Assembly (NCBI GenBank): GCA_900088475.1
Contig: FLMG01004374.1
Coordinates: 124,001-188,000, forward strand
Reading direction: 5' to 3'
Source: Hyphochytrium catenoides
Lineage: Eukaryota; Protista; Hyphochytriomycota
Length of the DNA: 64,000 nucleotides
The notes under the pieces: generated by a model
What the model saw: only the letters and a program-made list of their open reading frames with translations
Databases searched by the model: none
Told to the model about the DNA's origin: nothing
Position numbers and translations under genes: made by a program
Part shown: positions 1 through 4,474 of the stretch, one piece after another
Numbering within the stretch: position 1 is the first letter of the stretch
How the letters are laid out: every line of letters starts with the position of its first letter

Positions 1-2314
1 CCAGTCGGGTGGTACTTGGCAGTAGTAGAGCTCATAATATAAGCGCCCACACGTGCGGCTCGGTCTTTCTTGATTTTCTTTAATGTTCTCAGCTTGTCCT
101 CATCAAAGCCTACAAGACACAGCGCCACAAATGCAGTTTTATGAAGGTATCACATATCATATATAAGGTGTAAAGTGGTGAGCCCACGCCAACCATGATC
201 CCAGACTTTATAGACGTTCTAACCTTCTGGTTCATAGATCCAACCCGAAGTGTCACAGAGCGTAAGGACCACAGCGCCTAATTCCTGCAGCTTGTGTGCC
301 AGGCTAAGGGCAACGTTGCCACTACCAGTGATGACACATCTGCAGGCATCGGAAAGAGGAAAGGGTCGCACCATAGAAAGCGTGACTAGAAGGTTTGGAC
401 CGCCATGGGGTTAAACGGAGAATTACCTCTTGCCCTCCAGTGACTCTCCTCTTGCGTTGAGCATCTCTTGAGCAAAGTAAGCGACACCAAACCCGGTGGC
501 CTCTGGGAAGGTGATAACACCGTTCCCAATCATCCCAGACTCGCTCTACCATTGACAGTACGAGAGATTTGCTCAGATAGACTAGCATAGCGCAATTGGT
601 GTATAGCAACAAGCAGAAGGACGCGTTGGCGTCCAAAGCACTAGATATATCAAACGGAAGCGCGATGAGAGCAAAAAGGAAACGAAAGTGCTACCGTTTA
701 TGTCAAAATTGCGGCTGTTTGACATAAGCCCTTTGTGAGGTCTTTCGACCAAAGGAGGTGCATCCATAATTCGTCTGCATGGTAGCTGACAGAAGAGAGG
801 CAGAGTGCGGCCCACCTTTCCATACTTCTGCTTGATACGCTTGTACTGGCCGTACAAGAAGCCAGTCTCCTTCATGCCACACCCCATGTCTGGCGTAGGA
901 ATGTCTACATTAGGCCCAATGTAGTTCACAAGCTCAGTCATGAAAGACTGGCAGAAACGCTGGATCTCGGCCTCACTCTTCCCAACAGGATTGAAATCGG
1001 CGCCACTAAACGCAACATGAGACGGAACCAGGAGAGGGAGGGCGGAAGGGGGGCGAATCCATGAGAGCGTTGCCAGCAGCTAGGTAAGATAGTAGTAGTA
1101 GGGCACCATAGGGAAAAATCATATCTAAACAGTAGCTGCAACACTTTGGTTTTGATAAAACGAGAGCGAAGTGGGTGAGGTATTGATACTCCGTATACCA
1201 TACCCTGCAGCAGCTCCGATCTCGATGTCTGACGCAATTGCATGCCTGAAGACGTTCTCGAAAGCGATAGACTTTACGGTGCCTAGAGGATGAAGAGGAT
1301 GACAGGTAAATGAGGCAGCACAGTGTCAAAGAGCGTCAGAAATGGTTCGACGGATCTGAAACAGCTATTAAAAGACGCAGAAAACCCTCACCCAGTCCGG
1401 TGCCCTTATAGAAGCGTATGCCGCCCTCATAGAGCCCCAACGCCGAGGAATACTGGACACGATATCCTCTATTCACACGAGCGTTCCCCGTATCGTCTAG
1501 CCACGGGACTCGGAACTGTAGGGTCAAGTTAGGAAGGAAGAGATGGAATGTTCAGGCAACGGATCTATCTACGGGTTTTACCCCGTCTTTCTCTTCTCGC
1601 TCCCCGTTTCTCGCAGATCTCAGCACAGCAATGGAGCCGCTTCATTGACGTCCCCCACTCAAACATCTCTCCCAAATCCTCGCTCGTGATTGGGCCTCTG
1701 CCGCCTTAAGGGAGACGGAGGAGCCTTTGCCCAAGTTCATACATTGCTGGAACTTCTCTGCGCACCTGAATGACTCTCTCAGGCTCCATCAACTGCTTCA
1801 TCACCCAAGCGTAACGTGGGTACCGGTCAAAGACAGGGGCAAGTGAGAGAGTCAACGACTCCATTGCTTGCAGATATCTGAGTTTCAAAGCAGCATTAAG
1901 CGCTGCTAATGGCAAATCTAAAGGAGGGGAATATGGGAGATGCTATGCAGATGTGCAGCATACTTCCCGTAAAGGAAAGGACAAGACAGCATCTATAGAT
2001 AAGGTTGTCGCGCCGAGAAAGAGTACGATAGCGTGGATAAGAGATAGAGAAGATGGAGATTGTAGAGAGACAGTAAAGCTAATGGCATCCTTTATAGACG
2101 TTGCGCTTACTCGACCTGTGTGAAGGAAGAAAGGTGAAGAGAGTTGTTAGATATTGCGGCCACAGGCAACGTTAACTGACTGCATGGTGCTCACTTGGTA
2201 GGGATCCCGCCGGCGGGCTTCAGCGATCCTGGAGAGCAAGACATTAGTGGAGGTGCCGTTATAGGAATTCAGGTCAAGAAGGGACGTACAGCATCTCTGC
2301 AGCTTCTTGACCAT
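1..2314 (-). CDS. NADP-glutamate dehydrogenase-like protein with degenerate active site (multi-exon; 3' part lies beyond the left edge)
   Basis: Hand-spliced from ATG at 2314: MVKKLQRCC...RRRDPYQ|VE|YLQAMESL...MEPERVIQ|FRVPWLDDTGNARVNRGYRVQYSSALGLYEGGIRF...|GADFNPVGKSEAEIQRFCQSFMTEL...GFLYGQYKRI...PEATGFGVAYF...CVITGSGNVA...DTSGWIYEPEG. These are the GdhA-family motifs in the correct order, with GT-AG introns. Confidence 0.9.
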
Positions 2315-4474
2315 TTCTGAAGGCTACGTCTCCTTCTCTTCTAAAGAGTGGCTTGTTTCTCCAAACCTGGCGACGAGGTAGGTTCAATTGAATAATGATT
2401 CAGCAGAGGGAGAGACGTAGTATCAGACGTGGTAGACAGAGGAGAATTAGATGGCATCTCTCACCCTCTTCCCATGCTTAGTGCCATGCACATCGGACAT
2501 CAAAGAGCCGTGTAGCTGCTTGTTATCAACATTAGTCTTGAGATATCTCCTGCTACCTGTAAGGGAAAGGGACATGACATCAGGATAACATAGATATAGC
2601 GGTAGGACGCGAGACATATCCCTCCAAGGGCAGCTCACCGGCTATCAGGCAAGCTTTGCCTTCTCCAGCCGCCAAGGGCGACCGGATGATGGCAGGCCGC
2701 GCGAGTCTCAGCATTGCCGTTTAAGAGCTTGCAAATTCACTTCCTCTTTTTGGCGTTTGAATCGCTCCTTGTGCTATACAAAGCAAAGTGACGAGGGAAG
2801 AAGTCTTCCAAAAGCTGGCGAAGCGATAGTGGAAATCCAAGACACAGTCCCCTTCTGATTCCAACCGGCAGTTGTGGTCTCTGCTCACAGAGACAAACAA
2901 AAGAGACAGAATAACTGAGTGCAAGAGACAGAGTTAGCGCGAGGTATAGTATTCGTCTTACATATAATGTGTTCTGACGAGCTAGAATTTGTAGAGGGAG
3001 CAGACAGAAGCAACGAAAAATTATATCTCAAGCTGGAGTAAGCCTTAGAATCTGGGAGGATGGAGACAGAGACAGAGAAAGTTGAAGATTTTTTCTCAGA
3101 AAGCGGCTAACGCTCTCGTAGCCGTTAGAGAACGAGTCTTACGAATGCACGACCGGGCATCCTTGACTTCTCTTTCACAGTTATCGCGTACCAGGCAATG
3201 GTGTTGGTTCAAACATACTCCTTCCCTCGCTCATACCTATTCTCAATGATCGCCAGCTCGGACTCATATGCTTTGTCAGTCTTCAGATTGGCACATCCGG
3301 TGAGGGATGTCAAGACCCCATACTTTCTACCTTGCAAGGTTATGCCTCCCAAGGTCATGGAGACAAAGCATACTACTCTCACACGAACAACCAAACTTCC
3401 AGGGTTTGCCCAGATTACACGGCACAAATGCCGATGACCCGATTGCAAAGAAAAAGGGCCAAGACAGCATAAGGTTGGAGCCACAAGATCTAGCCTCAGT
3501 AGTGCTTTTGACAGCATCCCGATAGCCTAGCTGTCAAACAAACCGCTGATCCCATACCATCAAAAAGAGAAAGCCTGCCATCAAAGTAAAAGATGGCAAT
3601 TATAATGGAAAAAATAGAACTAAGTATCGGGAGGAAGAGCTGCTCCCTGCCTCCACGGAAACTAAGAAACAAGAAACAATAACGGCACAAACCCCTGGCC
3701 GCGGCTAATAACAAAAGCATCGCTCGGCATCGACACCTAAGAACCATAGAAACAGTGCTCGTAGCACCAAGCAAATGGGACCCAAAGCTCAATGAAGAGC
3801 GCATTAATATAGAGACCTATTCGGTGTGCCACTCAAAGGAGATGTAACGAGCGCAGTTGCCTGCCTTTGGCCAGCAAGTGTGTTAGTGGGGGCCAATCCA
3901 TACTTAGAACAGTAGTAAAAGCAGTGCCAAATCTGTGCGTACACCTCTTCACGAGCAAACTGATCACTGAACAATACTCTAGGTCATCCCTCTTGGAGAG
4001 AGATACATACTATACCATAGAGACAAGATCAGAAGCCTAAGCTGGAAATTACTTGTGCTATACTTTTGCAGGATGACAAGATCACATGCAAAAACCTAAT
4101 GTACGGGGTTAACGTTTGATAGCCAGCGGTCCGGCAGTTGATGAATGTGGTGCAGCATGCGAAGAAAGGAGGCAAGAATACACGGTGATAACCAGAAGAA
4201 CAATAGACTACCCCAACGTCAGAAAAAGAACCAATGTAGATGCAGTCACTATCAGCCCTTTTCCATCTCTGACAACTTGCTTATCCTTTTTATACTTTAG
4301 GATTATGCCCGGAACGGCTTCTCTTCCAGCGATTGACACATATGTGCCTCAACGGAGACGATTGAGGTTGCATAATACAAAGCAGCTGACGAGAGCAGAA
4401 TAAATATCAAGAGCGTAGAATAAGTTATAAGAGCCTTGAGGGCAAGGTCAGCGAAGAAGCAGCTCCCGAATGCA

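What the first reader, a model, noticed from the sequence alone, without database searches (positions are those of the whole stretch)
800..1520. Glutamate dehydrogenase homologue that has lost all three active-site lysines (candidate pseudoenzyme)
Seen in sequence: the spliced protein reads LGLYEGGIRFY where GdhA has GPYKGG.RFH, ENVFRHAI where GdhA has EQ.FKNAL, and IGAAAGGADF where GdhA has MGGGKGGSDF. The GVLTGK segment is also absent. Established: these Lys residues (E. coli GdhA K92, K116, K128) bind the two glutamate carboxylates and form the catalytic Schiff base. The reading frame, splice sites, the catalytic-Asp position (PTPD), PEATG and the GSGNV dinucleotide-binding motif are intact, which suggests continued selection. 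Inference: a non-catalytic GDH-fold protein (NAD(P)H sensor or regulatory subunit of a hetero-oligomer), an enzyme with a new substrate (K to E would favour a cationic side chain), or the inactive N-terminal half of a tandem double-GDH whose second half lies beyond the window.
Basis: partly seen in the sequence, partly recalled or inferred. Interest (0 to 1): 0.75.

Follow-up and report, generated by a model that had tools for sequence, protein, structure and literature searches.

The report
Conserved catalytically dead glutamate dehydrogenase paralogue
This intron-rich gene belongs to an old family of glutamate-dehydrogenase look-alikes, found across stramenopiles (water moulds, diatoms, brown algae), that has lost the residues needed for the reaction but is still strongly conserved, and that databases still label as a working enzyme.

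Summary
A minus-strand gene of at least 12 exons (window 2714 to 1; its 3' end lies beyond the window start) encodes a class-I, about 50 kDa GDH-fold protein. At the three active-site lysines it reads E (K89), R (K113) and A (K125), and the GVLTGK segment is missing.

It is not a decaying copy or a splicing artefact. It belongs to one clade found across stramenopiles, in oomycetes and in ochrophytes including diatoms and brown algae. All 41 members examined lack K89 and K125, 38 lack K113, and 39 have Gly for the catalytic Asp165. The window copy keeps Asp.

The clade has its own highly conserved N-terminal motif (VHG..WRNKPLFRREGD..F..G.EA). Selection on it is strong: dN/dS is 0.04 between two Phytophthora species. 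Its glutamate-pocket columns vary more than other columns that are invariant in working GDHs. The window gene keeps 104 of 112 clade-conserved columns.

Most likely reading: a mitochondrial, non-catalytic GDH-fold protein (pseudoenzyme) that keeps the oligomer scaffold and the Rossmann core. The nearest precedent is the inactive GdhA subunit of Thermus thermophilus. The tandem double-GDH idea is not supported.

I found no paper describing the clade, and one paper tabulates a member as an oomycete's GDH. The scan noted this stretch before in an overlapping window (s1-371095). No RNA run was listed.

The parts
2639..2714 (-). Exon 1 with the start codon (ATG 2714-2712). It encodes MLRLARPAIIRSPLAAGEGKACLIA, which looks like a mitochondrial presequence (Arg/Ala/Leu/Ser-rich, no acidic residue before position 18).
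   Evidence: ORF and sequence; donor GTGAGC. Relatives also begin with basic, Ala/Ser/Arg-rich N-termini. The targeting is an inference; no predictor was run.
2465..2556 (-). Exon 2, ending ..SLMSDVHGTKHGKR. This is the start of the clade-specific N-terminal motif (VHG).
   Evidence: tblastn with Pythium P0264 residues 33-46, 79% identity. V and H are clade-conserved columns absent from canonical GDHs.
2290..2366 (-). Exon 3: VWRNKPLFRREGDVAFRNGQEAAEM. This is the core of the clade-specific N-terminal motif.
   Evidence: tblastn with P0264 residues 45-72, 79% identity. W, P, L, G, F, G and A of this motif are invariant in 60 clade members. The motif has no PDB relative, and a region-restricted search found it only in GDH-like clade members plus one entry with no Pfam annotation that was not examined.
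2195..2228 (-). Exon 4: ..IAEARRRDPYQ, the start of the canonical GDH N-terminal helix region.
   Evidence: Aligned to P0264 EEAQRRDPYQ; splice sites AG / GTGAGC.
2111..2115 (-). Predicted 5-nt microexon GTCGA. Together with the next base it supplies Val-Glu.
   Evidence: It is the only in-frame path I found between exons 4 and 6. Acceptor AG follows a pyrimidine-rich tract and the donor is GTAAGC. It gives the same length as P0264 (..DPYQ-SE-FIQAV..). It is not confirmed by RNA.
1766..1877 (-). Exon 6: YLQAMESLTLSLAPVFDRYPRYAWVMKQLMEPERVIQ.
   Evidence: tblastn with P0264, P0006 and P0019, 56-59% identity.
1392..1515 (-). Exon 7: FRVPWLDDTGNARVNRGYRVQYSSALGLYEGGIRFYKGTGL. It holds the K89->E change (codon 1428-1426).
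   Evidence: Pfam ELFV_dehydrog_N 42 bits; PDB alignments place E on residue 89 of 1bgv; codon checked.
1204..1282 (-). Exon 8: TVKSIAFENVFRHAIASDIEIGAAA. It holds Q110->N, K113->R (codon 1247-1245) and K125->A (codon 1208-1206).
   Evidence: Family alignment; tblastn; codons. The exon alone is too short for a PDB or Pfam hit.
816..1005 (-). Exon 9: GADFNPVGKSEAEIQRFCQSFMTELVNYIGPNVDIPTPDMGCG..KQKYGK. It holds Asp at position 165 (codon 890-888).
   Evidence: Pfam ELFV_dehydrog_N 54.7 bits; best PDB match is P. falciparum GDH2 3r3j, E 3.9e-21; this exon was the query of the representative search.
427..545 (-). Exon 10: SESGMIGNGVITFPEATGFGVAYFAQEMLNARGESLEGK. GVLTGK is replaced; T209 of the PEATG motif is kept.
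   Evidence: Pfam ELFV_dehydrog E 9e-4, below the gathering score; tblastn; column table.
224..339 (-). Exon 11: CVITGSGNVALSLAHKLQELGAVVLTLCDTSGWIYEPE. This is the Rossmann GxGxxA loop, with N240 and V241 kept and the conserved Asp of the SD motif.
   Evidence: Pfam ELFV_dehydrog 33 bits; columns.
1..109 (-). Exon 12 (partial): FDEDKLRTLKKIKKDRAARVGAYIMSSTTAKYHPT. The gene runs off the window start; by comparison with relatives about 125 C-terminal residues are missing.
   Evidence: tblastn with P0264 up to residue 364 of 504.

Best explanation
The gene encodes a member of an ancient, vertically inherited stramenopile clade of class-I GDH paralogues that can no longer carry out the GDH reaction, i.e. 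a pseudoenzyme. Shown: the fold is that of a hexameric NADP-type GDH. The catalytic Lys125 and the gamma-carboxylate Lys89 are lost in every member examined, and Lys113, Gln110 and Asp165 in almost all. The rest of the protein is strongly conserved, including the core of the Rossmann dinucleotide-binding motif and a clade-specific N-terminal motif. Inferred: after mitochondrial import the protein still assembles on the GDH oligomer scaffold and probably still binds at least the ADP-ribose part of NAD(P)(H). It then acts without catalysis, as a regulatory or scaffolding subunit. The invariant motif VHG..WRNKPLFRREGD..F..G.EA would be the new functional surface, either as a partner-binding element or as an intra-oligomer latch. 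The partner could be a working GDH, as in Thermus GdhA/GdhB, or another mitochondrial protein; this is not known.
For: Exons hit ELFV_dehydrog_N and ELFV_dehydrog and solved class-I GDHs. The nearest named full-length relative (Pythium P0264, 63.5% identical over the exons) models at pLDDT 88 and superposes on C. glutamicum GDH with TM 0.83/0.93. In 41 of 41 clade members K89 and K125 are replaced, in 38 of 41 K113, and in 39 of 41 D165 is Gly. The clade is one side of a branch against 15 canonical or canonical-side GDHs (SH-aLRT 95), and its internal branching follows the organisms: Saprolegniales versus Peronosporales; diatoms with Triparma; brown algae with Tribonema. dN/dS is 0.04 between P. 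infestans and P. nicotianae (dN 0.020, dS 0.54, 494 codons). Glutamate-pocket columns are more variable within the clade than 122 other columns that are invariant in working GDHs (median entropy 2.17 against 0.44 bits, Mann-Whitney p 0.005). NAD-contact columns do not differ significantly (p 0.22), and the GxGxxA glycines and the SD Asp are nearly invariant. The window gene keeps 104 of 112 clade-conserved columns and 19 of 20 clade-specific ones. Its 11 introns all have GT..AG and its 377 codons hold no stop. MMETSP transcript-derived members show that the clade is transcribed in other species. Roles of Lys89, Ser380, Lys113, Gln110 and Asp165 are taken from bioRxiv 10.1101/2024.12.26.630402. 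The role of Lys125 as catalytic base is from my own knowledge of C. symbiosum GDH. Precedent for an inactive GDH paralogue acting as a regulatory subunit: PMC9570180 and bioRxiv 10.1101/2025.10.31.685773.
Against: No biochemical, proteomic or interaction data were found for any clade member. No RNA run for this organism was listed, so the splice model, including the 5-nt microexon, rests on homology. The last ~125 residues lie outside the window. NAD-contact residues are partly eroded in ochrophyte members (N240->K, N373->L/M, T209->P), so coenzyme binding is not assured across the clade. The window copy keeps Asp165, Asn240, Val241 and Thr209, so it is less degenerate than its relatives, and a residual or altered activity cannot be excluded from sequence. 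Whether these genomes also hold a working class-I GDH in the same compartment was not tested. The one clue (a P. tricornutum 'GDH-B' called cytoplasmic) does not favour a simple heterohexamer. The clade test used only 15 canonical or canonical-side sequences and no canonical stramenopile GDH.
Confidence: 0.6

Rival explanations
1. Neo-enzyme: the clade keeps the Rossmann domain because it still carries out an NAD(P)(H)-dependent reaction on a different substrate, using residues other than the classical Lys/Asp set.
For: Purifying selection is very strong (omega 0.04). The GxGxxA glycines and the SD Asp are nearly invariant. Oomycete-type members and the window copy keep several nicotinamide and phosphate contacts (N240 and V241 in the window; K and N of PAKAAN in oomycetes). 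Related folds (shikimate dehydrogenase, malic enzyme) show that the scaffold is versatile (own knowledge).
Against: No polar residue is conserved across the clade at any of the former catalytic or substrate positions: K89 is E/S/A/Q/D or M/I/V/L, K113 is R/S/A/T/K/I, K125 is H/A/V/Y/C/S. The pocket columns are the most variable part of the protein. To my knowledge every characterised Glu/Leu/Phe/Val dehydrogenase uses the Lys125 and Asp165 equivalents.
Confidence: 0.22
2. Thermus-type arrangement specifically: the dead paralogue co-assembles with a working class-I GDH into a heterohexamer and confers allosteric control.
For: Precedent in T. thermophilus GdhA/GdhB. The oligomerisation domain is well conserved with canonical GDHs: the clade majority residue equals the canonical residue in 95 of 129 canonical-invariant non-site columns.
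Against: Co-occurrence and co-localisation with a canonical GDH were not tested. A downy-mildew comparative table lists only the dead-clade protein as GDH for P. infestans. The diatom GDH-B is described as cytoplasmic. The Thermus proteins belong to another GDH subclass, about 21% identical.
Confidence: 0.15
3. Decaying pseudogene: a duplicated GDH drifting neutrally in this genome.
For: Loss of the catalytic lysines. No transcript evidence for this organism.
Against: There are 377 codons without a stop across 12 exons, all with GT..AG introns. The gene keeps 104 of 112 clade-conserved columns. The same substitution pattern occurs across oomycetes and ochrophytes, with omega 0.04 in the clade.
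Confidence: 0.02
4. Splicing or annotation artefact: alternative exons restore GPYKGG and GGGKGG, or this is the first half of a tandem double GDH.
For: The exon model is homology-based only. Database entries of 1077-2094 aa sit in the same clusters.
Against: No frame of window 1-3000 encodes the canonical motifs. The P. infestans, P. nicotianae and Plasmopara genes are nearly intron-free and their transcript-derived and genomic products show the same losses. The long entries match the GDH-like gene plus the downstream kinase gene: 494 + about 1060 aa.
Confidence: 0.02

Closest known systems
Thermus thermophilus GdhA, the catalytically inactive regulatory subunit of the GdhA/GdhB heterohexamer (PDB 3AOE; Tomita et al., as cited in PMC9570180 and bioRxiv 10.1101/2025.10.31.685773)
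   Same: A GDH paralogue that keeps the fold and oligomer-forming capacity, has no activity of its own, and is retained by selection. It is the only described case I found of a GDH-family pseudoenzyme.
   Different: It is bacterial and belongs to a different GDH subclass: about 21% identity and rank 47 in the fold search. It has no N-terminal WRNKPLFRREGD motif. Its function is known (leucine activation), whereas nothing is known for the stramenopile clade. Heteromer formation was not tested here.
Canonical class-I NADP-dependent GDH (E. coli GdhA, C. glutamicum 5IJZ/5GUD, P. falciparum GDH1/GDH2 2BMA/3R3J)
   Same: Same fold and domain order, with 40-46% sequence identity for clade members. 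The strongly conserved stretch KSEAEIQRFCQSFMTEL is shared, as are the GxGxxA loop and the SD motif.
   Different: The clade lacks Lys89, Lys113 (Arg in the window), Lys125, Gln110 and the GVLTGK segment. Relatives also lack Asp165, Ser380, Val377 and Asn373. Clade members score below NCBIfam's curated cut-off for the NADP-GDH equivalog: 476 and 445 bits against 536, while a canonical enzyme scores 767. The clade has an extra conserved N-terminal extension of about 40 residues.
ADLP, the alanine-dehydrogenase-like pseudoenzyme of T. thermophilus that senses NAD+ and regulates a CoA transferase (bioRxiv 10.1101/2025.10.31.685773)
   Same: An amino-acid dehydrogenase homologue that lost its catalytic lysine but kept NAD(H) binding and now regulates another enzyme. 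This matches the mode of action I consider most likely here.
   Different: A different fold family. Its partner and ligand binding are shown experimentally, whereas here both are inferred.

Membership tests
Glu/Leu/Phe/Val dehydrogenase superfamily (Pfam PF02812 + PF00208), fold membership | Significant match to both the dimerisation (N) domain and the NAD(P)-binding domain models | tested here: met
   Exons score 42 and 54.7 bits on PF02812 (cut-off 25.3) and 33 bits on PF00208 (cut-off 23.4). A relative's model superposes on solved GDHs with TM 0.83/0.93.
Catalytically competent glutamate dehydrogenase (EC 1.4.1.2-4) | Catalytic Lys125 (C. symbiosum numbering) in the GGGKGG motif | tested here: not met
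   Ala at codon 1208-1206. Replaced in 41 of 41 clade members.
Catalytically competent glutamate dehydrogenase (EC 1.4.1.2-4) | Catalytic Asp165 | tested here: met
   Asp at codon 890-888 aligns with residue 165 of 1bgv. It is Gly in 39 of 41 relatives.
Catalytically competent glutamate dehydrogenase (EC 1.4.1.2-4) | Lys89 (with Ser380) binding the gamma-carboxylate of glutamate | tested here: not met
   Lys89 is Glu at codon 1428-1426. Ser380 lies beyond the window, and in relatives it is A/I/H/L/N/S.
Catalytically competent glutamate dehydrogenase (EC 1.4.1.2-4) | Lys113 and Gln110 binding the alpha-carboxylate | tested here: not met
   Arg and Asn in the window. Arg might still bind a carboxylate, so this loss is conservative in this copy.
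Catalytically competent glutamate dehydrogenase (EC 1.4.1.2-4) | Score above NCBIfam's curated cut-off for the NADP-GDH equivalog NF006929 | tested here: inconclusive
   Relatives P0264 and P0180 score 476 and 445 bits, below the cut-off of 536, and canonical P0304 scores 767. The window protein itself could not be scored because the joined model was not used.
Stramenopile lysine-less GDH-like clade (defined in this report) | N-terminal motif VHG..WRNKPLFRREGD..F..G.EA upstream of the GDH core | tested here: met
   Exons 2556-2465 and 2366-2290 carry it, with 79% identity to Pythium P0264. All motif columns are kept.
Stramenopile lysine-less GDH-like clade (defined in this report) | Loss of Lys89 and Lys125, and retention of the clade-conserved columns | tested here: met
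   104 of 112 clade-conserved columns and 19 of 20 clade-specific columns are kept. The best-scoring relatives of every exon set are clade members, at 61-65% identity.
Stramenopile lysine-less GDH-like clade (defined in this report) | Gly in place of Asp165 | tested here: not met
   The window has Asp; 2 of the 41 relatives also have Asp. I treat this as variation within the clade, not as exclusion from it.
Stramenopile lysine-less GDH-like clade (defined in this report) | Placement inside the clade on a tree | not tested
   A tree row for the window protein would need the joined exon model, which I left out. Clade monophyly without it: SH-aLRT 95.
Thermus-type regulatory GDH subunit (GdhA) | Forms a heterohexamer with a catalytic paralogue and transmits an allosteric signal | not testable with these tools
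   No multimer prediction, interaction data or whole-genome inventory was available.

The most novel reading that the evidence does not exclude
The protein annotated as 'NADP-specific glutamate dehydrogenase' throughout oomycetes, and one of the 'GDHs' of diatoms, brown algae and other ochrophytes, is an undescribed mitochondrial pseudoenzyme. It dates at least to the common ancestor of oomycetes and ochrophytes. Its real function is carried by a new N-terminal motif on a dead GDH scaffold. Nitrogen-assimilation schemes that count it as GDH would then need correcting, and the motif would mark an unknown regulatory interaction.
Probability: 0.5. Interest if true: 0.7.

Novelty: new variant of a known kind. 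Interest (0 to 1): 0.6.

Why it matters
GDH sits at the junction of carbon and nitrogen metabolism. Transcript and genome studies of diatoms, brown algae and plant-pathogenic oomycetes routinely read this gene as a working ammonium-assimilating or glutamate-catabolising enzyme. For example, P. infestans XP_002904619.1 is the entry tabulated as 'Glutamate dehydrogenase' in PMC6264045. If the whole clade is catalytically dead, those pathway maps attribute GDH activity to a protein that cannot supply it. It would also give a eukaryotic counterpart to the only described GDH pseudoenzyme (Thermus GdhA). The invariant 20-residue motif and the many available orthologues make the question directly testable by expression, activity and binding assays, and pull-downs.

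Tried and rejected
- RNA evidence: the look-up of sequencing runs listed no run for window 1-2800.
- Exact or near-identical database protein for the window gene: none turned up. The best exon-summed identity is 65%, and nothing closer appeared in the two full-length homologue searches.
- PDB or Pfam relatives of the N-terminal motif: none. A region-restricted homologue search returned clade members, plus one 718-aa entry with no Pfam annotation that I did not examine.
- The short exon 1282-1204 alone gives no PDB or Pfam hit. Its register comes from the family alignment.
- Literature: eight full-text searches looked for a description of a lysine-less or pseudo-GDH in oomycetes, diatoms or stramenopiles, or for accession numbers of members (for the Thermus precedent). 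They found only the Thermus precedent and uses of clade members as 'GDH'.
- ESM Atlas feature search only returned generic GDH clusters.
- Synteny with the Peronosporales kinase neighbour: absent from the window.
- dS between Phytophthora and Plasmopara was saturated and no ratio was obtained.
- Rejected readings: decaying pseudogene, hidden canonical exons, tandem double GDH, and a cationic-substrate dehydrogenase (see the rivals).
- Position of the N-terminal motif in the AlphaFold model: not examined, because coordinates are not exposed by the tools.
Full report
**What is in the window**

Reading the minus strand of window 1-3000 shows an intron-rich eukaryotic gene. From the sequence, from homology to full-length relatives and from a splice-site check, I derive 12 exons:
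- 2714-2639, with the ATG
- 2556-2465
- 2366-2290
- 2228-2195
- 2115-2111, a predicted 5-nt microexon
- 1877-1766
- 1515-1392
- 1282-1204
- 1005-816
- 545-427
- 339-224
- 109-1, cut by the window start

All 11 introns are GT..AG. The phases fit, and the 377 codons hold no stop.

Single-exon translations pass Pfam's gathering scores for ELFV_dehydrog_N and ELFV_dehydrog. They align to solved class-I GDHs, the best being P. falciparum GDH2 3r3j at E 3.9e-21.

I searched exon by exon, by reference. I sent no joined model to any search, fold or tree tool. In one search the exon coordinates were concatenated in memory only to count stop codons.

**Check of the observation**

The HMMER alignments fix the numbering on C. 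symbiosum GDH (1bgv):
- Residue 30 of exon 1515-1392 is position 89.
- Residue 1 of exon 1005-816 is position 127, and residue 39 is position 165.

The codons read as follows:

| Codon | Bases | Residue | Position |
|---|---|---|---|
| 1428-1426 | GAG | Glu | Lys89 |
| 1247-1245 | AGG | Arg | Lys113 |
| 1208-1206 | GCA | Ala | Lys125 |
| 890-888 | GAC | Asp | Asp165 |

Gln110 is Asn. GVLTGK is replaced by SESGMI. PEATG and GSGNVA are intact. No frame of window 1-3000 encodes a canonical alternative for any of these motifs, and the window holds no second GDH.

**Relatives**

A search of 1.84 billion representatives with the 63-residue exon brought up proteins that share the odd motifs. Two full-length searches with such hits followed. 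They show that these proteins are widespread in stramenopiles:
- Oomycetes: Pythium, Globisporangium, Phytophthora, Peronospora, Plasmopara, Hyaloperonospora, Aphanomyces, Saprolegnia, Achlya.
- Ochrophytes: many diatoms, Triparma, Ectocarpus and other brown algae, Tribonema, Chrysoparadoxa, Heterosigma, Nannochloropsis, Ochromonas.

Their sources name them 'glutamate dehydrogenase (NADP+)' or 'hypothetical protein'. Several come from transcript assemblies (MMETSP), so the family is expressed elsewhere. All named hits are stramenopiles, which agrees with an earlier scan note calling this genome stramenopile.

The window protein is 61-65% identical to oomycete and ochrophyte members alike, and nothing closer was found. 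It therefore represents a further lineage of the same family.

**The losses are a property of the clade**

I aligned 41 members with 9 canonical enzymes. The results by position:

| Position | Clade members (n = 41) |
|---|---|
| Lys89 | replaced in 41 (M/I/V/L in the oomycete type; E/S/A/Q/D elsewhere) |
| Lys125 | replaced in 41 (H/A/V/Y/C/S) |
| Lys113 | replaced in 38 (Arg in the oomycete type and in the window) |
| Asp165 | Gly in 39 |

Gln110, Ala163, Gly164, Gly376, Val377 and Ser380 are also replaced.

On a maximum-likelihood tree (29 clade members against 15 canonical or canonical-side sequences) the clade is one side of a branch, with SH-aLRT 95. Its internal order follows the organisms. 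That fits a single ancient duplication followed by vertical descent, at least since the common ancestor of oomycetes and ochrophytes. One caveat: no canonical stramenopile GDH was in the tree.

**Selection**

Codon alignments recovered from genomic loci give dN 0.020, dS 0.54 and omega 0.04 between P. infestans and P. nicotianae over 494 codons.

Within the clade, 112 columns covered by the window exons are at least 90% conserved, and the window keeps 104 of them. Of 20 columns that are clade-specific (rare or absent in canonical GDHs) it keeps 19. The exception is position 165, where it has the canonical Asp. A drifting pseudogene is excluded.

**Which parts are constrained**

Among columns invariant in the canonical set, the 13 glutamate-pocket columns have a median entropy of 2.17 bits in the clade. 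The 122 other columns have a median of 0.44 bits (Mann-Whitney p 0.005). Eleven NAD-contact columns lie in between (median 1.49 bits, p 0.22). The GxGxxA glycines, the following Ala and the Asp of the SD motif are nearly invariant.

So the pocket has been released from constraint rather than rebuilt around a new conserved set. This argues against a new substrate and for a non-catalytic role. The Rossmann core is still under constraint.

The most conserved stretch of all is a clade-specific N-terminal extension, VHG-x7-WRNKPLFRREGD-x2-F-x2-G-x-EA. Its H, W, P, L, G, F, G and A are invariant in 60 sequences. It has no PDB or Pfam relative, and a region-restricted search found it only with this clade.

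An AlphaFold model of Pythium P0264 built on the clade alignment has mean pLDDT 88. It superposes on C. glutamicum GDH with TM 0.83/0.93. The extension is modelled at moderate to high confidence from about residue 45. I could not inspect where it packs.

**Localisation (inference)**

The window protein starts MLRLARPAIIRSPLAA.., and relatives start with similar basic, Ala/Ser/Arg-rich segments without a hydrophobic signal peptide. These look like mitochondrial presequences. No predictor was available.

**Most likely mechanism**

The protein is a mitochondrial GDH-fold pseudoenzyme. It keeps the oligomer scaffold and probably nucleotide binding, and it works through protein-protein contacts, with the N-terminal motif as the new functional surface.

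The only described analogue I found is T. thermophilus GdhA, the inactive regulatory subunit of the GdhA/GdhB heterohexamer. The same laboratory's ADLP shows that a lysine-less amino-acid dehydrogenase homologue can act as an NAD+ sensor for another enzyme.

Whether the stramenopile protein pairs with a working GDH is open. A downy-mildew comparison tabulates only the dead-clade protein as GDH for P. infestans, and the diatom GDH-B is described as cytoplasmic.

The window copy is less degenerate than its relatives: Asp165, Asn240, Val241 and Thr209 are kept and Lys113 is Arg. I therefore leave 0.22 for a residual or altered catalytic function.

**Comparison and novelty**

The protein is a member of the ELFV dehydrogenase fold family. 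It fails the residue tests for a competent GDH. Its relatives fall below NCBIfam's curated cut-off for the NADP-GDH equivalog: 476 and 445 bits against 536, with a canonical enzyme at 767.

Full-length relatives are single-domain proteins. The 1555-aa entries match a 494-aa GDH-like gene merged with the kinase gene about 0.8 kb downstream.

The full-text searches aimed at this question found no description of the clade. The library lacks most subscription journals, so prior description cannot be excluded.

I rate it a new variant of a known kind, namely GDH-family pseudoenzymes.

Noticed in passing
window 2111-2115 (-): Predicted 5-nt microexon GTCGA. Acceptor AG follows a pyrimidine-rich tract and the donor is GTAAGC. 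It is the only in-frame, homology-consistent link I found between exon 2228-2195 (..RRDPYQ) and exon 1877-1766 (YLQAM..). No RNA is available to confirm it.
   Followed up: partly
L003 4001-9640, L004 4001-9630, L005 4001-9607: In P. infestans, P. nicotianae and Plasmopara halstedii the GDH-like gene is followed about 0.7-0.8 kb downstream, on the same strand, by a protein-kinase gene of about 1060-1090 aa. Entries of 1555 and 1077 aa in the same 90% cluster look like merged gene models. No such kinase lies next to the window gene.
   Followed up: partly
P0121 / P0380 (JGI metagenome proteins): A second, separate GDH-like lineage has K89->T, K113->Q and K125->R but keeps Asp165, and carries an acidic insertion after GVLTGK. 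It sits on a long branch on the canonical side of the tree. It may be an independent loss of GDH catalysis.
   Followed up: no
P0001-P0004: The four top-scoring representatives hold two copies of the GGGKGG..QYKR segment joined abruptly. They look like chimeric or mis-assembled canonical GDH fragments, not relatives of the window gene.
   Followed up: no
window 888-890, 320-325, 489-491 (-): Unlike nearly all clade relatives, the window copy keeps canonical Asp165, Asn240/Val241 (GSGNVA) and Thr209 (PEATG). It has a two-residue insertion (ASDIEIG) relative to the oomycete-type members (one relative to ochrophytes) and Leu for the clade-conserved Pro in GPY. It is a distinct, less degenerate lineage of the clade.
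   Followed up: partly
L001 7503-7673: In the metagenomic contig carrying P0281 (the second-closest relative by exon score), a separate 56-aa call with a weak ELFV_dehydrog hit follows the 447-aa gene. The true gene is probably split there by an intron, so P0281 is C-terminally truncated.
   Followed up: no
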